A stretch of 59,996 bases of DNA, counting the filler, from Sluysia triapertura (Eukaryota), in NCBI GenBank assembly GCA_046118255.1. It is 5 parts of 5 records of this genome, joined end to end, with 100 filler letters (N's around TTAATTAATTAA, not from the genome) between each part and the next. Parts side by side here need not be neighbours in the genome. Positions count along the whole stretch, not along the records: positions 1 to 13,808 come from JBJNIA010018410.1; 4 more parts are not named here. One strand, 5' to 3'. Shown in pieces: positions 1-13,808 of the stretch. A model generated the notes under the pieces. The model did no database searches. It was not told where the DNA came from and saw only the letters and a list, made by a program, of their open reading frames with translations. Numbering within the stretch: position 1 is the stretch's first letter; each line of letters starts with the position of its first letter. The position numbers were made by a program, and so were the translations under genes.

Positions 1-1
1 A

Positions 2-1357
2 GATGAAATAAATAAAAATCCCCAGTCATTCTTGAGACAACTAACAGATGAAAATGATATAAATAATGATATGAAAACAATAAAGAATAATGATAATGAA
101 ACAATAAAAAATGATAACGAAATAATTGAGAATAATGAGGAACCTGATTACATAGTGAATCTTAATAGAAATCCACATATTGAAACAAGTAACAAGGAAA
201 CCAATACAATTAAAAGAAAAAACGAAGAAGATGTAATAATAGCAACTAATCCTATTAAAAAGAATGTTATTGATTTAACAAAACTAACAGATGAAAACGC
301 AGAAGAAATATTGGAATTAGATACAAAAAATATAGTTTATGCCTTTCTGTCCGTTGCATTTACAAATTTTAGTAAATGTAAGAAACTGTTACCGAAACTA
401 AAAAAATATGAGAATGCTATAATAAAGATATTAAAACAATTAGAAGAGAAATATAAGGATAAAGATGTTAGTGACTTTATAGAAAATGGACAGTATAAAT
501 CAATCATTAATAAGCAACTTAATAAAGGGATAAATAGAGACAGATTTAAGATAATCCTAGCCTACACTATTTTTCAATGTAGTAAAGAAAAAATAATTGA
601 CAAAAATAAAATAAACAAAGTTATAGACTTTATCAATAAGAAAACAAAATTATGGATTGAAGAACAGGGAGGTTGGCGAAATATAATTAAGGAAAAAGAA
701 AATCAGAAAACCGAAGAGACATCGAATTTACTTGCAAATTTATTTGGAAATAGTAATATGTTAAACACAGCCATACCGCGATTAGGAAATTCAACAAACA
801 ATATGTTATTTGTGATAATATTGTTAGCTATGTTTGGAATAAATAAATCTGGTGCGATAAAAGCTTTTGATTGTAATAAACCACAAGTTGGCAGAAAATT
901 TTCATTATTGGACACGGAGGATTGTCCGGAATCTAGGCCGAGTAGGATTCAAATAAAAGAGACTAGAGTTTTTAATGTATATCAAGAAGGAAACTTAATA
1001 ACAGCACTTGTTAGAGAATGTATGGTGAAAAGATCAGTAGCGATATGGTATTGTGGACATAATAGTCATTCTTCTATAATAGAATTACCATACGTATTGA
1101 AACCATTTAAAGTTCTGCCTAATAATCGTAGAGATGCTTTTGAAACTGGCTATCTAGGATTAGTCAAAGGAGATAAATTGAGAGTAAGGAATAACGAAAA
1201 AATAATTTATAATATTAGAACTGCCGGAAATGTACTAACAGATGGAACCTGTGAACAAGGATCTATTGAATATGAAGGGAAAATATATCACAACGTCGTA
1301 GCACAAGAAACATTTGTAGTAAGTTTGAAATCCTTTAACGAGAGTTTTGACATCTAA
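2..1357 (+). CDS. Polyprotein segment 1: N/E-rich linker, Bcl-2-like domain, signal peptide, N-terminal part of chuvirus-like glycoprotein
   Basis: Frame is open from nt 2 (GAT GAA ATA AAT...) to TAA at 1355-1357. The next ORF (ATG 1367) is in the same frame three codons later, so the TAA is an internal nonsense lesion. Confidence 0.85.
   Translation, partial: DEINKNPQSFLRQLTDENDINNDMKTIKNNDNETIKNDNEIIENNEEPDYIVNLNRNPHIETSNKETNTIKRKNEEDVIIATNPIKKNVIDLTKLTDENAEEILELDTKNIVYAFLSVAFTNFSKCKKLLPKLKKYENAIIKILKQLEEKYKDKDVSDFIENGQYKSIINKQLNKGINRDRFKIILAYTIFQCSKEKIIDKNKINKVIDFINKKTKLWIEEQGGWRNIIKEKENQKTEETSNLLANLFGNSNMLNTAIPRLGNSTNNMLFVIILLAMFGINKSGAIKAFDCNKPQVGRKFSLLDTEDCPESRPSRIQIKETRVFNVYQEGNLITALVRECMVKRSVAIWYCGHNSHSSIIELPYVLKPFKVLPNNRRDAFETGYLGLVKGDKLRVRNNEKIIYNIRTAGNVLTDGTCEQGSIEYEGKIYHNVVAQETFVVSLKSFNESFDI
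320..690 (+). CDS. Bcl-2-family-like domain within the polyprotein
   Basis: DTKNIVYAFLSVAF (BH4-like), AIIKILKQLEEKY (BH3-like helix), QLNKGINRDRFKIILAY (BH1-like, cf. LFxDGVNWGRIVALF), VIDFINKKTKLWIEEQGGWRNII (BH2, WIxxxGGW), in the correct order and spacing. Confidence 0.7.
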
Positions 1358-2610
1358 AAAGGTACAATGATGTCCAGATCATTTTGCAGAATGGACCAAA
1401 CAAGCTGCGATACAGGCGAATCTACATTAATTTACGAATTAGATAAATTTCAGTGTCCATTAATATTTTTAAAGCAAATAAAATTTAATTTAGTATCCGG
1501 ATTTGTTTACCAAAATAATGATGAATTACCAATTGAAGAAATAAATAAAAAAGAACAAGTACAGCGTAAAGCGCTAGAACAGAATTTTCATAATTTTCAT
1601 ATCAAAAGGAACCATAATAAGATGTGGAAAGGAAATCACCGAAACTAACTACCAAGGCATTTATCTATCTGAGAAAACAATATTGCAAGCCAAAAAAGGG
1701 ATAGATACCAAGAACATAAAATTAAATAGTTACTTTAATAACAAAATAGACTTTTATTACCATATTGGATTAATGTCTTTAGAGAAAATTTACCAAATTA
1801 TGATTTCTCGAGACTGTCAATTAAACAAAGAAATATTACGCACGAAACTAGCAGTGGCAATCACAAATCCCGATTTGGTAGCACCATTACTACCATTAGA
1901 AGAAGGAGTATTTGTTAGATTAATGGGAGAAGTGTTATATACTTACAAATGCAAAAAGGTAGAAGTTCAGTTAAAACCAGTAACTGAATGTACCAATGAA
2001 TTGCCGATAGTATACGGGAAAATAGAAACTTATTTAGAACCAGTAACAAGGGTAACATTTCCGAGTGACAAGATAAAACCAAAAGTAATGCATTGTTCAA
2101 ACGTAATGGCACCAGAATATAGAATAGATGAAAATTTATGGATTTCACTACCGCATAGAACTCAAGTTAAAGTACCAGAAATCATTGGATTAACGGAACT
2201 AAAGGGAAAACTAAAATTTTTGGCAACTAAAAATATACCTCATTCAGGTATATACACAAATGAAGATATACAAGCGGCTTGGCGAGAAATATTATTCCCT
2301 ATAAAAAGATCAAAAGTGTTGACAGATATAGTAAATAAGGCAACAGTAGAGAACGACGAAAGAATTAACTTTGAATTACTATTAGGTCCGGATCATTTTA
2401 AGAAAGCTGCACAAAATACATTAAAACAAATTTGGGGAACTTTCTAAATTTAGGTCAAGCCTTTTCAGGACTAATATGTATTTATATAATTATTAAGGTA
2501 ATAGCATTGATAATATCTCAAGTCTTTTCTATTGTAGGAATTTATAAAATTTTAGGTCTTACTTGGAAATTAATAATAGGCTGTTTCCCATTCTTGGCAA
2601 AATACTTGCT
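803..2610 (+). pseudogene. Chuvirus-like envelope glycoprotein (env), interrupted by 1 stop and 2 frameshifts in this assembly
   Basis: Signal MLFVIILLAMFGINKSGA, then AFDC..FSLLDTEDC, CGHNSHSS, GNVLTDGTCEQG, CGKEITETNY (frame of ORF 1683), YFNNKIDF, DCQLNKEILRTKLAVAITNPD, GEVLYTYKCKKVEV, CTNELPI, YLEPVTR, SGIYTNEDI..ILFP, WG(N)FLNLG + TM. This series is collinear with the Jingchuvirales G proteins and chuviral EVEs as I know them. Confidence 0.85.
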
Positions 2611-5600
2611 GCATCATCATGCAAATTCCCAAATAAACGCGCTAAGAAAAGAAAGAACACGAACTGAAAATGAAAATATAGCACTGCAAACAATTCAAAA
2701 TAATAAAAATGAAGAAATACAAAGCGATACTCAAAGAAATAAAATTTATCCAATTCCCCCAACGGCACCAACACCGAATGTAATTTACATGATAATATGT
2801 GCAAACAATAATTATAATAATTCTAAAAGACCAATGGCTAATGTCAAGATTAATGGTAGAACAATATTGGCACTCGTGGATACAGGAGCAGTAGCATCGC
2901 TAATTAATGAAAATCAACTAACAGAAAAAGAAAGAGGGAGTCTCGCAAGTCATTTTTCACATTTATCAGGAGTAACCGGAGACGCCATACATATCATTGG
3001 AGTAATGAAAGCTATATGTGAAGTGGGACAAAATAAAGTCGAAGTTAAATTGAGAGTGATGAAGAAATGCCCAGAAGATATGATACTAGGAATGGATATA
3101 CTGTCTCAACTAAAAGGAGTGATACTGGATTTCGATAGTGTTAAATTAAGGGATAGCCATTCAAATAGAACTATTGATGATGATGATGTGTATATCGACG
3201 AACCATTATGGTTATTAAGTAGAACTGAATACATAATGCCAGCAAAAACAAATAGCTCACTGACTGGCCGAATTATGTTCATTGTTTCAGAGACCAACCA
3301 AGAAAAATTGGATATAGGTATTGCATATTCAATCTGTAATAATTGTGAAGGAAGGATACCTGTCAGAATCATAAATTATACAAAAGATAATAAATGGTTA
3401 TTTACAGGTACTAAATTAGGAAGAATTGTGAACTATAGAACACCAACTATTAATATGGTGACGGATACGAAAAACAATACAATAAAACTACAACGGGATA
3501 TACAAGAGGAAGATTATGGAGAAATTCAAATTAATAACAAAAACATAACGAAAAGACAAAAGGAACAACTACATGAGGTTATATATCGATATCCAAGAGC
3601 AATCTCAAAAAATAAATATGATATTGGAGATTCAGTTATTATAAAACATGAGATACCATTAATAGAAGATAAAGTGATTCGAAGAAAACCGTACAGAATC
3701 CCTATTTGTAACCAGAAGGAAATGCAAGACCAAATCGATACTATGAAGAAGGCTGGAGTAATAAGGCCAAGCTTCTCTCCTTTTTCATCACCAGTATTGC
3801 CAGTTAAAAAGAAGGATGGTACAATGCGATTCTGCATAGATTTTAGGGAGTTAAATAAAATAACACGAAAAGATGTATTTCCATTACCACGAATAGATGA
3901 ATTGTTAGATACATTAGGTAACGCTACTTATTTTACAACTTTAGACTTGCAAAGTGGATACTGGCAGATTGAGATAGCAGAAAAGGATAAACACAAAACG
4001 GCTTTCACATGTGGAAACGAATTATACGAATGCGAAAAGATGCCATTTGGTCTAACCGGCGCACCAGCAACATTCCAACGTTGTATGAATTTTGTATTAT
4101 CGGGATGTAAAAACGCCATCGTTTACATAGATGATATCATAATATTTTCCAAGGATTTTAAAACTCACTTAGAAGACACAGATAATATTCTAAAAAGATT
4201 AGAAGTTGCCAGACTTAAAATAAAACCAACAAAATGTGTATGGGCAGAAGAAAAAGTTGAATTCTTAGGACACATAGTATCTAAGGATGGCATTAAGCCA
4301 AATCCAAGAAATATTGAAAAAGTGGTTAAATTCCCGCAACCAGATAATGTTAAAAAGATTCAAAGTTTCTTAGGCTTAGCCAATTATTACAGAAGATTTG
4401 TCAAGAAATTTGCAAAGATTGCGCAACCTCTTAGGAAATTAACAAAGAAAAACGTAGAATTCAAATGGACCGATGAACAAAATAAAGCATTTAAGGAATT
4501 AAAAGAACATCTTACTGCAGAACCAATACTAATTTTTCCTGATGTCAGTAAACCATTTATATTGATAACAGATGACAGTAATTATGCTATTGGCGCAATT
4601 CTGGGACAGAAAGATAAAAATAATCTTGAGTCAGTCATAGCATACGCCAGTCGAAGACTTAACAAAGCGGAGATGAATTATTCAACTGTAGAAAGAGAGT
4701 GTTTAGCAATTGTATACGCATGTAAATTGTTCAGACATTATTTGTTAGGACAAAAGGTTTATTTATATACTGATCATAAACCTTTAACCTATCTGTATAA
4801 TCATAGAGATGAAGTCAGTAGACTTAACCGATGGTTCAATAAATTATCAGAATTTAACTTGGAAATCGTTTATAAACCAGGGAGTTTGAATAACGGAGCT
4901 GATTGTATGTCCAGATTAACAAATGTAGATGATAAAGGAAACATTAATTTGATACAAATTATGTCAATATCGGGAAAAATGCAGAATTCAGAAGAGATTA
5001 TTAGATACCAAAGAAAAGATAAAGAAATTTCAGCTATTCTAGATGGATTGGCTAAAGGTACTTTAAACGAATTACAAGCAAAGAGATTATCCATTATGGA
5101 AGGGATATTAAGATTTAAAAATAACAAAGACGAATGGAAAACTATTGATCCAGAATCATTAATTATACCTATTCTAATACAATTTCATGACGGACAATTA
5201 GGAGGACACTTATCAACAAGGAAAACATTATCTAGAATTAAAAGTAAATATTACTGGGAAAATATGGAATCGGATATCAGAAAATGGTGTAAGGATTGCT
5301 CAATATGCTGTCGACGCAGAAACACTGGACAAAAGACAAAAGTACCATTGAAATCTATGCCAGTACAACTATCACCTATGGAATTTACTGCTATGGACAT
5401 TATGGGTCCTTTTCCAGAAACCATTAATGGAAATAAATATATAATAGTATTTGCGGATTATTTGACTAAATGGCCAGAGGCTTACCCAATGCCTAATCAA
5501 AAGGCCGAAACAGTGGCTCAAATATTAGTAGAAAAAATCATTTACAGATACGGAACTCCTAGAAAATTGTTGACAGATCAAGGAACCAATTTTACTAGCG

Positions 5601-7387
5601 ATGTTATCAAATCAGTGGCTAAAATCTATAACATTCTTAGAATTTATACGTCACCTTACCATCCACAAACCGATGGACTAGTGGAACGTTTTAACCGAAC
5701 TCTTATTAATATGATTCAATCATATGTGAATGACAGACAAACTGACTGGGATTTATATATAGCACCATGTCTTTTCGCTTATAGAAGTTCTGTACATCCA
5801 GCAACTAACTTTACTCCATTTTATCTAATGTACGGCAGACATTCTAACATGCCAGTGGATTTGGAGTGGATACCACCTACTTCACAATATTTAGAGATTC
5901 CAGAATATGTAACAACAATGAGAGAACAGTTACAAGATGCATGGAAGCGAGCAGGTCTCCAAATTAAATACTCTCAGGAAATATATAAGGATACATACAA
6001 CAAGACAGCAAAAGAACATAATTTTAAAGTAGGAGATGAAATATTAATAGACTATCCAATAACCAAACCGGGTCAATCATCCAAGTTACAAAAACCTTTT
6101 AAAGGTCCTTATCTAATAACAAAAGTTACTGATACAAATGTTTTTGTTAAGGATCCTAATAAGACTATTTCTGAAACGTTCGTGGTGCACGTTAACAGAT
6201 GTAAATTAGCACCGAAAGAAGAATATAATTTGAGAAATAGAAAAGTACAAAAATCAAAACTGAAAGTTCTACCAAGACACAAAGATCGAGATAAACCACC
6301 TTCAATTCATGTACTAAGGAATAAACAAGTGATATTTATGATAAATGCCCATGGAAATGACTTGGCTCATATAATGCAAAACGTGCGGTTTAATGGACGA
6401 TGGGTTAGAGCAATTGTAGATACCGGCGCTACGATTACCGTGGTCCATAAAAATTTCCTAACAACTTGGGAATTAATCTTCGTAAATAGACCAAGTCTTG
6501 TAACATACAATGTGAATCAAACGCCTGTAAATATTAATGGAACTCTACTCTGTTATATAGAAGTACTGGGACTATATGTACAAACCTTAGTAAAGGTCTG
6601 GGATAGTAACCCATATGAATTAATATTAGGAATGGATGTTATCAATAAATTAGAAGATATGGTCATTCATAGCAAATATGGATTTATAAAAATACCACCC
6701 GGATCAAATATGATTATACCTCAAATAGTGGCTCCACAAGTTGGTGACGAACTAACCCTATATCAAATGCCAATGTCAAATTCATCATTACAGGTCCCAA
6801 ACTTACCTTTGGCTGATATCGTCGAATCTACACTCCATTTTTCAGATGCATCTTGGGGATCACCATCAACGATTACATCAGAGGAAAACTCGGATTCAGG
6901 AATTAGCTCAAGCTCCGATATTCATAGTACAGTAATGATAATGACCAATGTAAGAAAAAGAACTAGTCCTAGTAAGAATTGTTGTTTTGGGAAAATAAAT
7001 TATTGGCTTTCTATCTTGATTGTAATCTTTTTATCAATTATGACTAGTGTCATGGCAACAGAAACAGCTGAAGAATACAAAAATATGAATATAGCCACAA
7101 ATCATGGCAGGGAACAGAAAATAATAATCACCGATGTGTATAACCAATACTGGAAATTTGAATTTATTTCCAAGAAAATGATTCTACGACATAAATTTGA
7201 AATTTATTGTATCTATTTAAAGCCATTGTTAAAGCCACATTGTCTGCATTATGCTTACAGACCTATGCTAATAACTTTCTCTTTAGACATTCCAAGAAAT
7301 ACGCGAGACATTTGGAAATTTATCAAACAAGTAGATCAATTAAGCAATAAAGAAATAACGAAAATACAGAGTTTTACCCAACTATAA
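2432..7387 (+). CDS. pol: Polyprotein segment: env TM/tail - aspartic protease - RT - RNase H - integrase - second aspartic protease - C-terminal membrane/secreted domain
   Basis: 1651-aa uninterrupted ORF. PR LVDTGA (~2879) and ILGMD; RT FCIDFRELN, LDLQSGYWQ, MPFGL, YIDD (4124-4135); RH TDDS/IAYASR/ERECLA/TDHKPL/NNGADCMSR; IN H-H-CxxC, MDIMGP, TDQG, GLVERFNRTL, GPY (~6104); second protease IVDTGAT (~6419) and LILGMD. Confidence 0.97.
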   Translation: MGNFLNLGQAFSGLICIYIIIKVIALIISQVFSIVGIYKILGLTWKLIIGCFPFLAKYLLHHHANSQINALRKERTRTENENIALQTIQNNKNEEIQSDTQRNKIYPIPPTAPTPNVIYMIICANNNYNNSKRPMANVKINGRTILALVDTGAVASLINENQLTEKERGSLASHFSHLSGVTGDAIHIIGVMKAICEVGQNKVEVKLRVMKKCPEDMILGMDILSQLKGVILDFDSVKLRDSHSNRTIDDDDVYIDEPLWLLSRTEYIMPAKTNSSLTGRIMFIVSETNQEKLDIGIAYSICNNCEGRIPVRIINYTKDNKWLFTGTKLGRIVNYRTPTINMVTDTKNNTIKLQRDIQEEDYGEIQINNKNITKRQKEQLHEVIYRYPRAISKNKYDIGDSVIIKHEIPLIEDKVIRRKPYRIPICNQKEMQDQIDTMKKAGVIRPSFSPFSSPVLPVKKKDGTMRFCIDFRELNKITRKDVFPLPRIDELLDTLGNATYFTTLDLQSGYWQIEIAEKDKHKTAFTCGNELYECEKMPFGLTGAPATFQRCMNFVLSGCKNAIVYIDDIIIFSKDFKTHLEDTDNILKRLEVARLKIKPTKCVWAEEKVEFLGHIVSKDGIKPNPRNIEKVVKFPQPDNVKKIQSFLGLANYYRRFVKKFAKIAQPLRKLTKKNVEFKWTDEQNKAFKELKEHLTAEPILIFPDVSKPFILITDDSNYAIGAILGQKDKNNLESVIAYASRRLNKAEMNYSTVERECLAIVYACKLFRHYLLGQKVYLYTDHKPLTYLYNHRDEVSRLNRWFNKLSEFNLEIVYKPGSLNNGADCMSRLTNVDDKGNINLIQIMSISGKMQNSEEIIRYQRKDKEISAILDGLAKGTLNELQAKRLSIMEGILRFKNNKDEWKTIDPESLIIPILIQFHDGQLGGHLSTRKTLSRIKSKYYWENMESDIRKWCKDCSICCRRRNTGQKTKVPLKSMPVQLSPMEFTAMDIMGPFPETINGNKYIIVFADYLTKWPEAYPMPNQKAETVAQILVEKIIYRYGTPRKLLTDQGTNFTSDVIKSVAKIYNILRIYTSPYHPQTDGLVERFNRTLINMIQSYVNDRQTDWDLYIAPCLFAYRSSVHPATNFTPFYLMYGRHSNMPVDLEWIPPTSQYLEIPEYVTTMREQLQDAWKRAGLQIKYSQEIYKDTYNKTAKEHNFKVGDEILIDYPITKPGQSSKLQKPFKGPYLITKVTDTNVFVKDPNKTISETFVVHVNRCKLAPKEEYNLRNRKVQKSKLKVLPRHKDRDKPPSIHVLRNKQVIFMINAHGNDLAHIMQNVRFNGRWVRAIVDTGATITVVHKNFLTTWELIFVNRPSLVTYNVNQTPVNINGTLLCYIEVLGLYVQTLVKVWDSNPYELILGMDVINKLEDMVIHSKYGFIKIPPGSNMIIPQIVAPQVGDELTLYQMPMSNSSLQVPNLPLADIVESTLHFSDASWGSPSTITSEENSDSGISSSSDIHSTVMIMTNVRKRTSPSKNCCFGKINYWLSILIVIFLSIMTSVMATETAEEYKNMNIATNHGREQKIIITDVYNQYWKFEFISKKMILRHKFEIYCIYLKPLLKPHCLHYAYRPMLITFSLDIPRNTRDIWKFIKQVDQLSNKEITKIQSFTQL

Positions 7388-7531
7388 AAGATGTAACAGA
7401 GCACTCTTATACAACTACAAATCGGAAAAGCAACTTGACTAATTCAACTACAAAAGTTACTACAATGCACTCTTATAACTTTTTTGATAATGTTACTAAT
7501 TTTTACAGTATTATAAATACTTTGGACTGTA

Positions 7532-7942
7532 ATGTACTTGTTTCAAATTCATAAGAAAATACGGGCCCCTACGAATAATAAAAACCGTATGCCGTTAATT
7601 TTAATTACAATGATTACAATAATACACCGCCACGAATATTCGTTTAAGACAGAACACTTTGAATTTTATAATAGCGATAATGAAGTAAAAGTTAAAATAA
7701 TAAACCAAAATATTCATGCCAAGTTTGCTTGTCTGAAACCAGCCAGACTTAATTTCAGCTCGTGGACCATCTATGAAAATTACATAAATAACGACTTAAA
7801 GGGTCCTATTACAATATGTTCGGACATGTTACCTAATGAAGATAGACATTATTACAAAAATTCGTCATTCATCAAAATACTTACACTTTGCTCTAAAAGG
7901 AACATGAAAACACTTAACAATGTTAGAAACATTACGAAATGA
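7532..7942 (+). CDS. Hypothetical accessory protein, possibly secreted
   Basis: 136-aa ORF with a short hydrophobic MPLILITMITII segment, 3 Cys and an NFS sequon; overlaps the next ORF. Confidence 0.4.
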   Translation: MYLFQIHKKIRAPTNNKNRMPLILITMITIIHRHEYSFKTEHFEFYNSDNEVKVKIINQNIHAKFACLKPARLNFSSWTIYENYINNDLKGPITICSDMLPNEDRHYYKNSSFIKILTLCSKRNMKTLNNVRNITK

Positions 7943-8219
7943 TCCTGCTTTAGTAATATTAATAGTGGCAACAATACTATTCATAATCGCTTTAGCTATA
8001 GTGGTATTAACCATCATTATGTTCGTTTCAAACAAGTGTCGATACCCATGTTTACCACATGATAATAATAATGACGACGATGATGCATACACAGTTGCAC
8101 ATCGAAACAATTACTCTCCTCCTCTAGGTATGCCAATATTCCCACCTCCAATTTACGAATATGCTTCGAACAACCAGTCACCATTTATTTATGGGAGTTG
8201 GCACATGACACAACTCTGA
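7920..8219 (+). CDS. Small single-pass membrane protein with PPxY motif
   Basis: Long hydrophobic stretch ALVILIVATILFIIALAIVVLTIIMFV, juxtamembrane CRYPC, acidic patch, PPPIY in the tail. Confidence 0.55.
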   Translation: MLETLRNDPALVILIVATILFIIALAIVVLTIIMFVSNKCRYPCLPHDNNNDDDDAYTVAHRNNYSPPLGMPIFPPPIYEYASNNQSPFIYGSWHMTQL

Positions 8220-9140
8220 TCAACATTACTAGCTTGTATTTGTTTATCATATGTTTCAAATGCATGTATAATAGATTTAAATTCAGAAAACATATACCAC
8301 GAGATTTAACTCCTTGAATATCTGTTACATCAACTCAAAAGGACATTATTGTCGCAGTACAAGCAGATAAATTCAAATTGATCAATCTTTACATAAAATG
8401 TTGTTTAATGGGTTGGTGTCAAAATGAATCGATATTAAACAAAAATATTTTTTATTGATAATCTTATAGAATATCAAATGTTCTACGTTACACTAACTAT
8501 AGAACTCGAACATGATCCTGAACATAATTCAAAAATGATTTTAATAAGGCATTATAGAATTAGAACTCAACTATTTATTTTTAGACAATCACAGAAAATT
8601 ATCGAATTTCCCATGATAATTTATCGATACATTGGCAATATTATACGAGTAGACAACCCACTAGAGAATAATGCGTTAATATTAGCATATACCTTGCATG
8701 GTATCATGAATTATGGATTAGTTTTCCCTAAAGACACTATTCGAATATATGGTTATCCGCATACTAAAATTATGTTCTTTAGTATTTGGATTATACGTAA
8801 TGAGGAAATAAGTAATACGACAGAATTTTGGCCATTCATTAGGAAATTCGACGTACAAGTACCAGTTATTGATAGTCACGAAAACGACTCAGATCTAAAA
8901 GTAATAAATAAGCTTAAGTTCTATAATAATAATGTTACAAATTCATCTTGTGCTACATTTACAAATGTAAGTAAGATAAATGCAGAACATCCAGCTATAG
9001 TAAAGTCTAATAATAATATCATTATAATTATAAATTATGTTTTAATAACAAATCAACTCATAATACTAATGATAAATTTTATAATACCTAAATTTTATTT
9101 GTTCTTTAGGCACAGAGCTCATTTTTTATATAGATTTTAA
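8205..9140 (+). CDS. Hypothetical surface glycoprotein, 5' part decayed; intact ORF 8478-9140
   Basis: MTQL*STLLACICLSYVSNA reads like a broken signal peptide. The 220-aa ORF has clustered N-glycosylation sequons (NTT, NDS, NVT, NSS, NVS) and a hydrophobic C-terminus. Confidence 0.4.
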
Positions 9141-9729
9141 GTATTTTAAGTATTATGAGTATTGCATAATTGACCATATGTAATGGTTCTGCCATTCATG
9201 TTGGGTCATATGTAATATTTATATAATGTTAATTAATTTCAAATCTGTAAAATAATAAAAGTAAGAAGTTAGGTTTAATATTAAATAGTTAATTTTAGGA
9301 TCGTATAAATGACTGTATGTGATGGTCACCATCCATTTCGAGTCATGCACAAACTAAAATCATTACTTAATTGTATAGGTTTAGGTTTTTTAATCTTTAA
9401 AATTACTGTACTATCTAATTATTATCTTATTATATTTTTTTTGTTTACAGTTAGAAAATGTCCTAATCAACAAAGTCCATCCGAAAATACTTTGCTCGTA
9501 CTTCCCCTTGCTTTCACCGATTTCATTTCTTTTGATTTTATGATCTGTTCAATTCCTCTCCTTCCCCACTACCTAGCTGTCCACTGTGTAGGGCTACTAT
9601 TACAGAATGCAATATTTTCTATAAGAAAAAGTTTCGTAGGTCTTATACCTTTTCAGTTAAGTATATCACTGATGATTCGGAGGAGCCCGGTATTGATGTT
9701 TATCAACTGGAAACAACCATGAAGTAAAG

Positions 9730-9764
9730 GAATCTAAGTAGAAACTAAGTAGAATCTAAGTAGA
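9730..9764 (+). repeat. 11-bp tandem repeat x3 (AA[T/A]CTAAGTAG)
   Basis: aatctaagtag aaactaagtag aatctaagtag read directly. Confidence 0.8.
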
Positions 9765-10304
9765 CGCCCTCCTAATTTCTCTAAAACATTAACAAAATCC
9801 CAAAGACGCAATAGACACAGGCATCAATTAAAACATTTCTATAAGGAACAAGAATCGAAGTTATCGCATCCTCGAAAACCTATAAACCCATTCTTAAAAA
9901 GACGAAATTAGGTTTACTTCTTTATAAAATCATATAATTTTAATATATTCTCATGTTGAATTCAATATACAACTAAGCTTACTGATTTATATTTTCTTTT
10001 TATGTATATCTTATTACCTTCATTTTTCCAGTAACTTACAAGCCAGAATATTAAACCATCAGAAAAATTTCTACGTTTACATCGACTGCTATTGCCATGA
10101 AAACATAACCCCTGTCTTTTTCCCTGATTCTGTTTCAACCCCCAATACTTTGAAGTCTGAGCTAGATTTGAATCTTGCGACGCACATATTTTCTTTAAAA
10201 CCCGAAGCATCTTTCATATCGCTGGATGGGCTAGCACAAATCCCCGATTCTATAAACTCTCGATATCTTGTAGTTTTATATAAAACTTTTGTTCTAAAAA
10301 GAAA

Positions 10305-11240
10305 AATGATTATTTTAATCAATTACTAAAGAAATTACTTTAGTTTCACTACTATCCACTGATGAACTAAAACAGCTTCCCTACAGTTGAAAAGTTAATT
10401 CGATTTCTCTTTACTCCATCTTAACGTTGGCTTCATTTCAGCTTTTATGCAGAAATGTAACTCAATATTTAGCAGTTTTATGATAATTGGTGAAATTAAA
10501 AATCAGAAATTGAACAAGACGGAAATTAAAGCTGTCGAAATAAGTCGACTAATTTCGCTGATTAAATATCGACAACAATTTCCTTCTATTTTAATTATCT
10601 AGTGAGATTTGTGGTAAACAATCTCCTTATCTTCTTAATATCATCTAATTAAAATTTAAAATCATTGTTACATTGCTTTTATAATATTAACGTAATTTGT
10701 CAACTTAATTTAAGTATAAAATTATAATAAATTTATTTCTCAGGAGCATCTTTTGTATAATATGTTGTGTGTTAACCGTACGTTGCACATATTTGAATTA
10801 GTATCTTTATAAGTATCAATTTGATATGAACTTTATTAATACTTAGACATCAGAATATATTTAACTTTAGCTTTAAATTATAAAAATGAATTAGAATAAC
10901 TAATTTTTACGTTATTTACGTTGATACGCTTCGCAATACATCATCATTAAAAATACTAATAAAACTCAATAAAGCTAATATAATGAGAAAAACATTTTTC
11001 CTGAGTTATCAAATTAAACAAATAAATTAATTAACAAATGTACTTTAATATTTTAACAATTAAAACCTTGTAAATGATTATTTCTTCATATTTCTCATTA
11101 TTTTGTTTTAATTTAAGTATTTTACATACTTATATTAGTATTAAAATTCATCATAATGTCTCATCTTAATTCTTTAATAATGTTGAACTTATTCTGTTAT
11201 TCTGAGTCTTGACCCTTACATCTATCTTTATCCTTCACTG
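10305..11240 (+). repeat. Dispersed repeat family A, copy 1 (unclassified, coding-like)
   Basis: Shares blocks (ctatccactgatga; atttgtggtaaacaatc; ttttacgttatXtacgttgaXXXgcttcg; ttaacaaatgtactttaatatttt) with 41345-44450 and the reverse complement of 56520-57530. Confidence 0.8.
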
Positions 11241-11869
11241 ATATATATATTTTATTTATCTACACACTAAGTACAAAAAATAAGTATGATACTTAATATT
11301 AAATCAATAATTTAAAACTTATTTTAAACATAGGTTTAAACTAGTAGCAAAATACTTATGCTGTGGTATTTCTAACTCTTAACGCAAAATATTTTTTGTA
11401 ACTTTATAAGCCAATATTTTATCTGAAGATAAGTGTTCTGTAGTTATGGTCTTAACAAATGCTCAAATAATGTAATTTTCTCAAAATTTTAATAATTTAC
11501 TCTTTAGCTTTAACAATTTAATATAAACGAAAATAATAACTTTATTTCACAAAATACAAAAGTTTTGTAGAGATTAAAGCTCAAACAGCGTTTAACTTAA
11601 TAACCACATTATTTTGAGTATATATTACCCTCAATCAATCGGGGACTTAATAATTGAACTAACTGCAATTTTAAGTCAATTTTATATTTTCAACTTCGAA
11701 AGTTGACAAATGATCCAACAATATATAATTTACCAATGCATGAAATTGTAGATAAAATCGAATAATTGTTGTTCGGTGAATGTTGCCCAAGTGTTGAATA
11801 AACTGTTAATTGTGAACGAATTAACGTTGACGCTGCAAATTTGATATAAGTGTACCAAATTCAAAGTGG

Positions 11870-12060
11870 AGATTTCCAAATAGCGATTAACTAAGCTGGT
11901 GCTAATTTATTTACTAGTCATCAGGCAAAAGGAATCGATGAAATGTTTACAAGCTTCTATTCTATTTTTAGAAGCTAATTTTCTTTTTTGGAAAGTATTT
12001 TTTAAATGATTTTAAAAGATTTTTAAAGAATTTTAGATGATTTTAAGTGGTTTTTAAATC
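11870..12060 (+). repeat. Dispersed repeat family C, copy 1
   Basis: ctggtgctaatttatttactagtcatcaggcaaaaggaatcgatgaaatgttt aligns with ctgatgctagtttatataatagtcatcagccaatgaaaatcgatggaatgttt at ~29976. Confidence 0.6.
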
Positions 12061-13729
12061 TTAAAGCCTACTGAAATTTCTTTTTGTAACGTTCTATTTT
12101 AAAAATTGTAATTTTTATGTTGTTCCTGAAAATCGAATGACTCCCGGCAATTGATAAAATTATTTGGATCACAAGTTAATTTATCACAACGAATAGTGTT
12201 TCAATGAACGAATAATAGAAACAATTGGCCAAAAACAAATAAAAATTTAAATTTCAAGCGCCACATCGAACAGTAATCGTTGAATTCACTTTATGTAAAT
12301 TTTATTAATTTTTTCCTTTTGTGGTTCTCATATTTTTTAATTACAGTAGTTTTTAAATATAGTTTATCTTGGTGGAAGTACTTTATAAGTACGTTTATTT
12401 TTACTAGAACTTTTGAAATTAATTTATACTAAAATGATTAAATAATTATATATAAATATTTAATTTTCAGCAAGATTTAGTTTATTAATAAGTAAATACT
12501 TGATTTTCCTAATCATTCAATTTTAGCAAGATTTAAAATAAATATATTCATAATAATAATTATTATTATTAAAATTGGCAAGATTTTATTGATTGGTAAA
12601 TAAACTTATGTATGCAAGAATTGAGATATCGAACAACTCACTTCTCAGTTTATTAAAAGAATTTTCTTACCAATAAATATGTTAAAAGGGTTCGCCTACG
12701 ATCTTAGACTTACAAGAAACGGCTAGTTCGTAGGATTTTAATGGAGGTCGAATAATGTTTTAATGCTAGTGACTTCTTAGATTTGGTATTATGTAAACTC
12801 TATTTTATGATTGATGAGCAAACAAATCGTTATCCAAAGAGTTTATTAAACAAAATTCTCGGTAAATTCTTTATCTACTTTTAAGTAGAATTCTCAATAG
12901 CTTTATGAATTATAGTATAGATTCCTTTTCCGCTTTTTTCTAATCGAGGTTAAACGTGTTTAGAACGTATGTACTTGATTTACGTTCCGCTTTATCGCGA
13001 GATTAATTACTTTAGTTTATAATTAAACAGAACCTGCAAAGTATTGATTTTACTACTCGGTCTTAAATGCTGAAAATAATATATAGTGATGAGTTTAAGG
13101 CAAGTAAAAATTATATAATTTAATTAAATTTTACTAAAGGATAGGAGAAAATTTGAATAATGTCATAACGTACTTAATTTAGATAATTTGTGACTGTGTA
13201 AATTTTCAAAGAATATAATTCAAAATTTTAGATTATTCATTACTATAAAAACTTAAACTAACTCTTACAAAATAAATCGTGAGGGTCGATTCGACTAATT
13301 AGATACGTTTTATACCTGATCAGAGACGTTCTGATTAGATTTCTTAATCTTATACAACAAAATTAATGCTAAATATTGAAACATCTGGAATAATGTAATA
13401 ACGATGTATTTGAATCACTGCTTTACTAAAAGAAATAACGTTATTCACAATCAAATGAAGTTAAGACAACCCTATAACAGTCTGTCAATATAATTAATAA
13501 TTTATATGTTAAATCAGCCTGATCAAGTATTCAATATTTTAATTTAAGGAACTTGGTAAAAACTCAAAAATATATTAACAACAATGTTTACCAAAAATCG
13601 TGTAACAATTATAAAGTTAATTGTTATAATTATAATTATAAATATAATTATAAAGTTAACAAAAATCTTCACAAATAATAAAAAATTATAATAATTATAA
13701 TTATTTTAATACCTAAGCCTAAGAATAAT

Positions 13730-13808
13730 AATGGTTTTGATAATGAAGTGTTTCGAAGCACGTCAACGTAGATAACGTAAAATTAGTTATTTTAATTAAT
13801 TTTGTAAT
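13730..13808 (-). repeat. Fragment of repeat family A
   Basis: tgaagtgtttcgaagcacgtcaacgtagataacgtaaaattag is nearly identical to 56571-56615. Confidence 0.8.

What the first reader, a model, noticed from the sequence alone, without database searches (positions are those of the whole stretch)
320..690. Bcl-2-like (vBcl-2) domain embedded in a retrotransposon/retrovirus polyprotein
Seen: four motifs in Bcl-2 order over ~125 aa. They are DTKNIVYAFLSVAF (cf. BH4 DTRALVADFVGYKL of Bcl-w), IIKILKQLEEKY (BH3/helix 2-3), YKSIINKQLNKGINRDRFKIILAY (BH1, with NWGR changed to NRDR) and FINKKTKLWIEEQGGWRNII (BH2). About 40 aa later comes a hydrophobic segment that doubles as the glycoprotein signal peptide. 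Known: Bcl-2 mimics are carried by large DNA viruses (herpes-, pox-, asfar-, irido-, adenoviruses), and some have lost the BH3 groove and act on innate signalling instead. I know of none in an LTR retroelement. Inference: the element captured a host Bcl-2 gene and expresses it in-frame. Signal-peptidase cleavage would leave it tail-anchored in the ER membrane like cellular Bcl-2 proteins, possibly to block death of producer or infected cells.
Basis: partly seen in the sequence, partly recalled or inferred. Interest (0 to 1): 0.93.

Follow-up and report, generated by a model that had tools for sequence, protein, structure and literature searches.

The report
Bcl-2-like domain in an enveloped retroelement
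A virus-like jumping gene (Ty3/gypsy type, with a rhabdovirus-type envelope protein) encodes, just before the envelope's signal peptide, a very diverged relative of the cell-death regulator Bcl-2; two distant relatives carry it too, I found no earlier report, and the 3D fold is still unproven.

Summary
All four quoted peptides are present at the stated places. The second half of the stretch (BH1 to BH2, window 491-694) is more than chance. A profile of the window domain plus two distant relatives finds only Bcl-xL, Bcl-2 and A1 among the 60 hits shown from the PDB (best E=1.5e-4). The relative L001 alone hits Pfam Bcl-2 at E=3.6e-5. All scores stay below Pfam's curated cut-off. Both AlphaFold runs failed (pLDDT 47 and 35), so the fold test is inconclusive.

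The domain lies in frame 42 residues before a signal-peptide-like segment. A class III fusion glycoprotein (PF24664) follows, and its tail runs in frame into protease, RT, RNase H and integrase. This window copy is defective: its glycoprotein gene has two in-frame stops and two frameshifts.

Relatives from two metagenomes include unbroken polyproteins of 3003 and 4844 residues with the same layout. Three lineages, including the two most divergent, carry the Bcl-2-like domain; two lack it. That fits an old acquisition followed by losses.

An anti-death role on the ER membrane is plausible but only inferred. Neither of the two papers I checked, nor any of four literature searches, mentions such a domain in an LTR retroelement.

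The parts
2..313 (+). Asn/Lys/Glu-rich low-complexity stretch in the same reading frame. The frame is open to the left edge of the piece, so the protein's start lies outside the window.
   Evidence: Translation. Tandem 21-24 nt repeats at 48-138. No Pfam family.
314..697 (+). Bcl-2-like domain. The part with statistical support, helix 4 through BH1 to BH2, is about 491-694. BH1 reads NRDR at 533-544 and the BH2 GGW is at 668-676.
   Evidence: Pfam PF00452 E=0.0032. PDB phmmer and profile hits to Bcl-xL, Bcl-2, A1 and BAX. Motif coordinates. The N-terminal half has no independent support.
698..802 (+). Polar and acidic linker between the Bcl-2-like domain and the signal peptide. It contains a Met at 758, 15 residues before the hydrophobic core.
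   Evidence: The five relative proteins read also have a Met a few to about 25 residues before their hydrophobic core, most followed by basic residues.
803..856 (+). Signal-peptide-like segment: a 13-residue hydrophobic core followed by NKSGA. It is the only membrane-type segment between the Bcl-2-like domain and the ectodomain.
   Evidence: Hydropathy scan. Aligned with the equivalent segments of L001, L002, L003/L006 and L005, each ending in small residues just before the conserved [AG][FWY]DC start of the ectodomain.
857..2752 (+). Class III viral fusion glycoprotein gene (Monjiviricetes/rhabdovirus-G type), from ectodomain to cytoplasmic tail, with its membrane anchor at about 2444-2587. 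The gene is broken by 2 in-frame stops and 2 frameshifts.
   Evidence: PF24664 matched piecewise over profile positions 3-648 of 653 (E=6e-21, 1e-43 and 4e-10). Break counts. Hydropathy.
2825..3121 (+). Retropepsin-type aspartyl protease, in frame with the glycoprotein tail.
   Evidence: PF13975 and PF00077, E=5e-19 and 1e-16.
3803..4855 (+). Reverse transcriptase and RNase H.
   Evidence: PF00078 E=1e-34; PF17917 and PF17919 E=1e-37 and 8e-36.
5150..5707 (+). Integrase: H2C2 zinc domain plus catalytic core, of Ty3/gypsy type.
   Evidence: PF17921 E=2e-18; PF00665 E=4e-13.
6377..6655 (+). Second retropepsin-like domain after the integrase, in the same frame. A membrane-type segment follows at about 6980-7069.
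   Evidence: PF13975 E=7e-9. Hydropathy. Relatives also carry extra protease domains before and after Pol.

Best explanation
The stretch is a highly diverged Bcl-2-family domain. It belongs to an old lineage of envelope-carrying Ty3/gypsy retroelements of invertebrate animals.

In this lineage one long polyprotein frame holds, in order:
1. accessory cytosolic domains (ubiquitin-like domains, and in some lineages the Bcl-2-like domain);
2. a signal peptide;
3. a class III fusion glycoprotein with its membrane anchor;
4. protease(s), RT, RNase H and integrase.

Shown:
- the sequence similarity to Bcl-2 proteins over BH1-BH2;
- the in-frame position just before the signal peptide in three lineages;
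- the polyprotein layout, including unbroken relatives.

Inferred: during translation the signal peptide takes the nascent chain to the ER. The glycoprotein ectodomain crosses into the lumen and signal peptidase cuts after the small-residue motif. The Bcl-2-like domain stays on the cytosolic face, held by the signal peptide. This resembles the tail-anchored topology of cellular Bcl-2. There it most likely acts as a pro-survival factor for a cell that is making glycoprotein and reverse-transcribed DNA.

The copy in this window is defective because its glycoprotein gene is broken. Here the domain is a well-preserved relic, not evidence of current activity.
For: Homology:
- The window piece against the PDB gives almost only Bcl-2, Bcl-xL and BAX among its top weak hits, aligned from BH1 to BH2.
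- The profile of window plus L001 has best E=2.2e-4, and the three-lineage profile has best E=1.5e-4. All 60 hits shown are Bcl-xL, Bcl-2 or A1.
- Pfam PF00452 gives E=3.6e-5 over profile positions 36-100 for L001 and E=0.0032 for the window.
- The L001 and L002 pieces, each searched alone, also find Bcl-xL.
- GGW and five other columns are invariant in three sequences that share only 21-27% identity. A basic residue aligns with the Arg of Bcl-xL's NWGR in all three.
- Predicted helices match the helix 4-8 register of the Bcl-xL alignment.

Architecture:
- PF24664 glycoprotein and Pol domains lie downstream in the window.
- The same order occurs in L001 and L002.
- Unbroken polyproteins P0012 (3003 aa) and P0010 (4844 aa) show that the glycoprotein is translated inside the polyprotein frame.

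Age:
- The domain-bearing lineages include the two deepest branches of an RT tree.
Against: - No score reaches Pfam's curated cut-off: 18.4 and 24.7 bits against 31.4.
- A scan of 1.84 billion representative proteins found nothing at E<=0.001, and a word-index search found no small Bcl-2-like protein.
- The N-terminal half has no detectable Bcl-2 similarity.
- In BH1 the Trp-Gly of NWGR is lost.
- Structure prediction failed, so the fold is unconfirmed.
- Only three sequences carry the domain, and in L001 only the C-terminal half lies in the glycoprotein frame.
- Two related lineages do without it.
- A Met precedes each signal peptide by a few to about 25 residues, so the glycoprotein could also be made separately (from a spliced or internally initiated message). 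In that case the topology argument would hold only for the full-length translation product.
- The hydrophobic core is short, at 13 residues.
- Nothing here bears on function.
Confidence: 0.6

Rival explanations
1. The stretch is a helical leader or adaptor domain of the envelope polyprotein with no common ancestry with Bcl-2. It would resemble a matrix protein or an Env leader peptide that links capsid and membrane. The WIxxxGGW match and the weak profile hits would then be convergence or chance in a Lys/Ile/Asn-rich helical sequence.
For: - All scores are below Pfam's cut-off.
- The N-terminal half has no Bcl-2 signal.
- There are no hits in the large protein libraries.
- The structure models are uninformative.
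- Related lineages have ubiquitin-like domains plus a linker at this position instead, so the slot tolerates different content.
Against: - Three sequences of different composition (window 29% GC, L002 39%, L001 43%) each find Bcl-xL independently and in the same register.
- Combining them improves the E-value about a thousandfold and leaves only Bcl-2-family proteins among the 60 hits shown.
- HMMER reports a bias correction of 0.0.
- No matrix, Gag or leader family was hit.
Confidence: 0.2
2. It is a true Bcl-2-family domain whose role is not to block apoptosis. Some viral Bcl-2-fold proteins have lost the BH3 groove and act on innate signalling or autophagy. Here it could instead serve assembly at the membrane.
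For: - BH1 lacks the Trp-Gly of NWGR in all three lineages, and BH3 and BH4 are not recognisable.
- Its neighbours in relatives are other host-type modules: ubiquitin-like domains, ankyrin repeats and an RNase T-family exonuclease. This suggests a broader host-manipulation set.
Against: - A basic residue at the NWGR Arg position and the BH2 GGW, both groove-lining in cellular proteins (established knowledge), are kept.
- Nothing here measures function either way.
Confidence: 0.15
3. It is a chimera: a host Bcl-2 exon joined by accident to an inserted element, or by misassembly, in this one locus.
For: The window is cut at the left edge. No LTR was found in it, so the element's own limits are not seen.
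Against: The same domain sits at the same place, in frame before the glycoprotein signal peptide, in L001 and L002. These come from two other samples and have only 30% identity.
Confidence: 0.02

Closest known systems
Cellular Bcl-2 family (Bcl-xL, Bcl-2, A1/Bfl-1, BAX; Pfam PF00452)
   Same: - Best and nearly only sequence matches.
- The alignment runs from helix 4 through BH1 to BH2 with WIxxxGGW.
- There is a basic residue at the NWGR Arg position.
- A hydrophobic segment follows after a flexible linker.

   Different: - Scores are below the family cut-off.
- NWGR reads NRDR here, and VTFTK and QSEAR at the aligned positions in the relatives.
- BH3 and BH4 are not recognisable.
- It is not a free-standing gene but a segment of a retroelement polyprotein.
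- The hydrophobic segment is a 13-residue signal-peptide core followed by a glycoprotein, not a C-terminal tail anchor.
Viral Bcl-2 homologues of large DNA viruses (herpes-, pox-, asfar-, irido-, adenoviruses); from established knowledge, no comparator fetched
   Same: A host-type cell-death regulator carried by a virus-like genome, often too diverged for ordinary sequence thresholds.
   Different: - Those are separate genes in double-stranded DNA viruses.
- This one sits in a reverse-transcribing Ty3/gypsy-type element and is fused in frame to the envelope precursor.
- No viral Bcl-2 protein came back as a named hit in my searches.
Envelope-carrying Ty3/gypsy elements with GAG-ENV-POL order and class III (gB-type) ENV, reported in Nematoda, Bryozoa and Platyhelminthes (PMC13524379)
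   Same: - Ty3/gypsy Pol, with a class III fusogen placed before Pol.
- That paper notes that some ectodomains are flanked by two membrane segments rather than a signal peptide and one anchor.
   Different: - That paper does not mention a Bcl-2-like domain: zero occurrences of 'Bcl-2' or 'apoptosis'.
- Here the glycoprotein matches the Monjiviricetes G model PF24664, and its tail is in frame with Pol.
- I could not test whether this family is among the published ones.
Capture of a chuvirus-type glycoprotein by mosquito BEL/Pao elements (Anakin; PMC7642597, as cited in PMC12440569 and PMC13524379)
   Same: A glycoprotein from negative-strand RNA viruses taken up by an LTR retroelement.
   Different: A different retroelement superfamily, a different gene order, and no accessory Bcl-2-like domain reported.
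Internal signal peptides that leave the upstream protein membrane-held (flavivirus capsid anchor, foamy virus Env leader peptide); from established knowledge
   Same: A cytosolic domain directly before a signal sequence in a viral polyprotein or precursor. After signal-peptidase cleavage it stays attached to the membrane.
   Different: Those upstream domains are structural (capsid or leader), not Bcl-2-like. The cleavage is proven for them and only inferred here.

Membership tests
Bcl-2 family (PF00452) | Score at or above Pfam's gathering cut-off (31.4 bits) | tested here: not met
   Window piece 18.4 bits, E=0.0032. L001 piece 24.7 bits, E=3.6e-5. L002 piece gave no Pfam hit.
Bcl-2 family (PF00452) | Significant sequence-profile match to solved Bcl-2-family proteins, in BH1-BH2 register | tested here: met
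   Profiles A2 and A4 against the PDB have best E=2.2e-4 and 1.5e-4. All 60 hits shown are Bcl-xL, Bcl-2 or A1. Query positions 70-137 align to Bcl-xL 124-193.
Bcl-2 family (PF00452) | BH2 motif (W-x3-GGW) | tested here: met
   WIEEQGGW at 650-676. GGW is invariant in the window, L001 and L002.
Bcl-2 family (PF00452) | BH1 motif (NWGR) | tested here: inconclusive
   The window has NRDR, keeping the Asn and Arg but not the Trp-Gly. L002 keeps the Arg and L001 has Lys at that column.
Bcl-2 family (PF00452) | Recognisable BH3 and BH4 / helices 1-3 | tested here: not met
   The N-terminal 79 residues searched alone find no Bcl-2 protein. Only the A1 alignments reach back to query position 43-44.
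Bcl-2 family (PF00452) | Globular bundle of about eight helices around a central hydrophobic helix | tested here: inconclusive
   AlphaFold2 gave pLDDT 47 (single sequence) and 35 (3-row alignment). The models are all-helical with plausible helix boundaries but no reliable packing. Foldseek found no hit below E=0.89.
Bcl-2 family (PF00452) | C-terminal hydrophobic membrane anchor after a flexible linker | tested here: inconclusive
   A hydrophobic segment lies 42 residues after GGW (40-57 in relatives). It has a 13-residue core plus a cleavage motif and is followed by an ectodomain, so it has signal-peptide character.
Envelope-carrying Ty3/gypsy retroelements (GAG-ENV-POL type) | Pol with protease, RT, RNase H and integrase (H2C2 + rve) in Ty3/gypsy order | tested here: met
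Envelope-carrying Ty3/gypsy retroelements (GAG-ENV-POL type) | Viral fusion glycoprotein with a signal peptide and membrane anchor, placed before Pol | tested here: met
   PF24664 covered over profile positions 3-648 of 653, in pieces. Anchor at about 2444-2587. The gene is broken in this copy and unbroken in P0010 and P0012.
Envelope-carrying Ty3/gypsy retroelements (GAG-ENV-POL type) | Gag with CCHC zinc knuckles upstream | not testable with these tools
   The window is cut at its left edge. Relatives L001, L003, L005 and L006 have CCHC/capsid-like ORFs upstream.
Envelope-carrying Ty3/gypsy retroelements (GAG-ENV-POL type) | Long terminal repeats | tested here: inconclusive
   There are no direct repeats of 40 nt or more in the window or in L001. 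Neither holds a whole element with both flanks for certain.
Viral Bcl-2 homologues (functional class) | Blocks cell death or binds BH3 ligands | not testable with these tools
   No functional data can be obtained here.

The most novel reading that the evidence does not exclude
A family of very large, envelope-bearing Ty3/gypsy retroelements of invertebrates has kept, over long evolutionary time, a working pro-survival Bcl-2 homologue. It is delivered to the cytosolic face of the ER by the envelope's own signal peptide. It forms part of a set of host-derived accessory modules (ubiquitin-like domains, ankyrin repeats, an RNase T-family exonuclease, a RING protein). Such a host-manipulation toolkit has so far been associated with large DNA viruses, not with retroelements.
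Probability: 0.3. Interest if true: 0.8.

Novelty: new variant of a known kind. Interest (0 to 1): 0.62.

Why it matters
Virus-encoded Bcl-2 homologues are a classic example of host-gene capture, but to my knowledge they have been described only in large DNA viruses. A Bcl-2-type domain kept in a reverse-transcribing, envelope-carrying retroelement would show two things. Elements on the border between transposon and retrovirus can also carry cell-death regulators. And a signal peptide can double as the anchor of an upstream cytosolic effector.

The finding also points to a poorly described family of giant polyprotein retroelements with several host-like accessory domains. That bears on how retroviruses gain accessory genes. 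The claim is directly checkable with more copies and a structure.

Tried and rejected
- **Large protein libraries.** The domain (151 aa) against 1.84 billion representatives gave 0 hits at E<=0.001. The word-index search with the domain gave none at E<=10, so no cellular donor or close kin could be named.
- **Collection scans.** The window+L001 alignment (A3) was scanned against JGI metagenome contigs and IMG/VR. The three-lineage alignment (A5) was scanned against those two and GTDB genomes. All patterns matched only unrelated stretches.
- **Structure.** AlphaFold2 on the single sequence gave pLDDT 47, and on a 3-row alignment pLDDT 35.
- **N-terminal half of the L001 domain.** I looked for it in the neighbouring frame.
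- **L003/L006 and L004/L005 lineages.** I looked for the domain there and it is absent.
- **dN/dS.** Not attempted, because the three copies share only 21-27% amino-acid identity and are saturated.
- **Host of the window.** Not identified. There are no tRNA or Rfam hits and no recognisable host gene in 7400-13808.
- **Sample accessions.** They were not found in the paper library.
- **Chimera or misassembly.** Rejected because of the shared architecture.
- **Gag capsid bundle.** Rejected because there is no Gag family hit and Gag lies further upstream in relatives.
- **Slips in form.** Searches were corrected and resent.
Full report
**1. What is in the window**

The piece (1-13808) is AT-rich, with GC between 0.22 and 0.34. 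On the + strand one reading frame, open to the left edge, reads in this order:
- an Asn/Lys/Glu-rich low-complexity stretch;
- the stretch of the finding;
- a polar linker;
- a short hydrophobic segment;
- the start of a viral fusion glycoprotein.

Pfam identifies the downstream protein as a Monjiviricetes-type (rhabdovirus G-like, class III) fusion glycoprotein, PF24664. It is covered from profile position 3 to 648 of 653 in several pieces (E=6e-21, 1e-43 and 4e-10). Its last part continues in frame into a retropepsin protease, RT, RNase H and an H2C2 + rve integrase, which is a Ty3/gypsy-type Pol.

After the integrase the same frame holds a second retropepsin-like domain and a membrane-type segment. 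The glycoprotein gene of this copy is broken by two in-frame stops and two frameshifts. Pol is uninterrupted. No LTR-like direct repeat, tRNA gene or Rfam family was found in the window. The element's 5' part lies outside the piece and its 3' end was not located.

**2. Is the Bcl-2 likeness more than chance?**

For the window piece alone (151 residues, 284-736):
- Pfam's Bcl-2 model gives E=0.0032 and 18.4 bits, at the BH2 end only. This is below the 31.4-bit cut-off.
- phmmer against the PDB gives weak hits (E from 0.06 to about 0.8). All but a few of the 60 shown are Bcl-2, Bcl-xL or BAX. The alignments run from before BH1 to past BH2.
- GGW occurs once in all six frames of the 13.8 kb.
- A scan of 1.84 billion representative proteins found nothing at E<=0.001. 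A word-index search found no small relative.

So the domain is very diverged and has no close kin among called proteins.

**3. Relatives**

Searching with the whole frame found one protein, P0001 (30% identity). Its alignment with the window starts inside BH1 and keeps YIQEQGGW. Searching with P0001 found P0002, P0003 and P0004. Their contigs are L001, L003 and L004 (ENA assembly ERZ25039515) and L002 (JGI 3300013315). Cluster look-ups added two unbroken giant polyproteins from the ENA sample: P0012 (3003 aa, L005) and P0010 (4844 aa, L006).

All relatives share this layout:
- Gag-like ORFs with CCHC knuckles;
- a long frame with ubiquitin-like domain(s) and an acidic linker;
- a signal peptide and the PF24664 glycoprotein with its anchor;
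- one or more retropepsin domains, in some relatives with ankyrin repeats;
- RT, RNase H and integrase, then more protease-like sequence.

P0010 and P0012 show that the glycoprotein is meant to be translated inside the polyprotein frame.

**4. The domain in the relatives**

A Bcl-2-like segment sits at the same place, in frame before the signal peptide, in two relatives:
- L002 has the whole domain (P0004 residues about 30-175).
- L001 has only the C-terminal half in the glycoprotein frame. I found no similarity in the neighbouring frame and did not join frames.

It is absent from L003/L006 and L005. L004 is cut before that point.

The three copies share 21-27% identity. Eight columns are invariant, among them GGW and the Gly before BH1. 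A basic residue aligns with the Arg of Bcl-xL's NWGR in all three.

Independent tests on the relatives:
- The L001 piece hits Pfam Bcl-2 at E=3.6e-5, over profile positions 36-100.
- The L001 piece hits Bcl-xL in the PDB at E=0.001, second only to a repeat-driven match to a designed repeat protein.
- The L002 piece finds Bcl-xL at E about 0.65, through BH2 only.

Profiles do much better than single sequences. Window plus L001 has best E=2.2e-4. All three lineages have best E=1.5e-4. In both cases all 60 hits shown are Bcl-xL, Bcl-2 or A1, and query positions 70-137 align with Bcl-xL 124-193.

The three sequences come from DNA of 29%, 39% and 43% GC. Composition therefore cannot explain the shared hit. 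I take homology of the BH1-BH2 half as likely, about 0.75-0.8.

**5. What is not supported**

Only the weaker A1 alignments reach back to that region.
- Both AlphaFold2 runs were poor: pLDDT 47 for the single sequence and 35 for a three-row alignment.
- The models are all-helical, and their helix boundaries fit helices 4-8 of the Bcl-xL alignment.

**6. Age and origin**

In a neighbour-joining tree of the RT domain, L002 and the window are the two longest and deepest branches. L001 groups closely with the domain-less L003/L006 and L005. RT identities to the window are 49-63%. The simplest reading is one old acquisition by the family with later losses, not a capture by this particular element. 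The donor could not be tested, because no cellular Bcl-2 protein could be brought in.

**7. How it probably works (inferred)**

The hydrophobic segment (803-841) has only 13 hydrophobic residues. It is followed by small residues (NKSGA) and then the conserved [AG][FWY]DC start of the ectodomain. The relatives have the same pattern, ending in TNT, AQA, SSA or TNG. That is the look of a cleavable signal peptide.

This segment is internal to a polyprotein whose downstream Pol must end up in the cytosol. The likely topology is therefore:
- upstream domains in the cytosol;
- ectodomain in the ER lumen;
- anchor in the membrane;
- Pol back in the cytosol.

Signal-peptidase cleavage would leave the Bcl-2-like domain on the cytosolic face, held by the signal peptide about 40-57 residues after BH2. 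This mimics the tail-anchored state of cellular Bcl-2 proteins. Internal signals work this way in the flavivirus capsid anchor and the foamy virus Env leader (established knowledge). A pro-survival role is the most natural guess. I give that functional step about 0.35.

One caveat applies. In the window and all five relative proteins read, a Met lies a few to about 25 residues before the hydrophobic core. In most it is followed by basic residues. The glycoprotein could therefore also be made from its own start. In that case only the full-length product would carry the anchored domain.

**8. Comparison with what is known**

- Envelope-carrying Ty3/gypsy elements with the order GAG-ENV-POL and class III ENV are described in Nematoda, Bryozoa and Platyhelminthes. 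Some ectodomains there are flanked by two membrane segments (PMC13524379). That paper contains no mention of Bcl-2 or apoptosis.
- Capture of chuvirus-type glycoproteins by BEL/Pao elements is known (PMC7642597, as cited in PMC12440569).
- Four full-text searches found no paper on a Bcl-2 homologue in an LTR retroelement. This negative holds only for that library.
- Viral Bcl-2 homologues of large DNA viruses are the functional analogue (established knowledge). None came back as a named hit, and none was fetched.

**9. Verdict**

BH1-BH2 and the context hold; BH3/BH4 and the fold remain open.
- I rate this a new variant of a known kind (virus-carried Bcl-2 homologues) in a new type of carrier.
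- The window copy is defective.
- Interest is 0.62.

Noticed in passing
L005:7169-16180 (P0012) and L006:6512-21046 (P0010): Relatives have single uninterrupted polyprotein frames of 3003 and 4844 residues. These hold ubiquitin-like domains, a signal peptide, the class III glycoprotein, up to four retropepsin domains, ankyrin repeats, a C2H2 finger, RT, RNase H, integrase and more. That is unusually large and complex for a Ty3/gypsy-type element.
   Followed up: partly
L005:16542-17882, L004:7920-9260, L006:21702-22841, L001:19611-20084: An RNase T-family (DEDD) exonuclease gene follows the polyprotein in several lineages, at only 21-36% identity between them. It therefore looks like an accessory gene of the element rather than host flank. 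In L006 a RING-finger ORF (zf-C3HC4_3) comes next. Neither was detected in the window.
   Followed up: partly
L001:6922-9042; L005:7169-8700 (N-terminal 500 residues of P0012); L003:9403-9700: One or two ubiquitin-like (beta-grasp) domains lie upstream of the glycoprotein signal peptide in the relatives. Pfam ubiquitin gives E=0.0034 in L001, and the pattern is clear by eye in P0012. They occupy the same cytosolic slot as the Bcl-2-like domain.
   Followed up: partly
window:6377-7069: A second retropepsin-like domain and a membrane-type segment follow the integrase in the same frame. Relatives also have protease-like domains both before and after Pol. The purpose of the repeated protease domains is unexplained.
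   Followed up: partly
window:7400-13808: There is no recognisable gene, LTR, tRNA or Rfam family downstream of the polyprotein frame. Only short ORFs without family hits occur, and GC falls to 0.22-0.26. The 3' end of the element and the host could not be determined.
   Followed up: partly
L005:20304-21005 and L004:11676-12269: Fragments of a prolyl 4-hydroxylase alpha-subunit gene (P4Ha_N, E=6e-26) lie a few kb downstream of the element in two near-identical contigs. This points to an animal host for the relatives in the ENA sample.
   Followed up: no
window:48-138: Imperfect tandem repeats of 21-24 nt encode the Asn/Lys/Glu-rich N-terminal stretch of the frame. This is low-complexity sequence of unknown role.
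   Followed up: no
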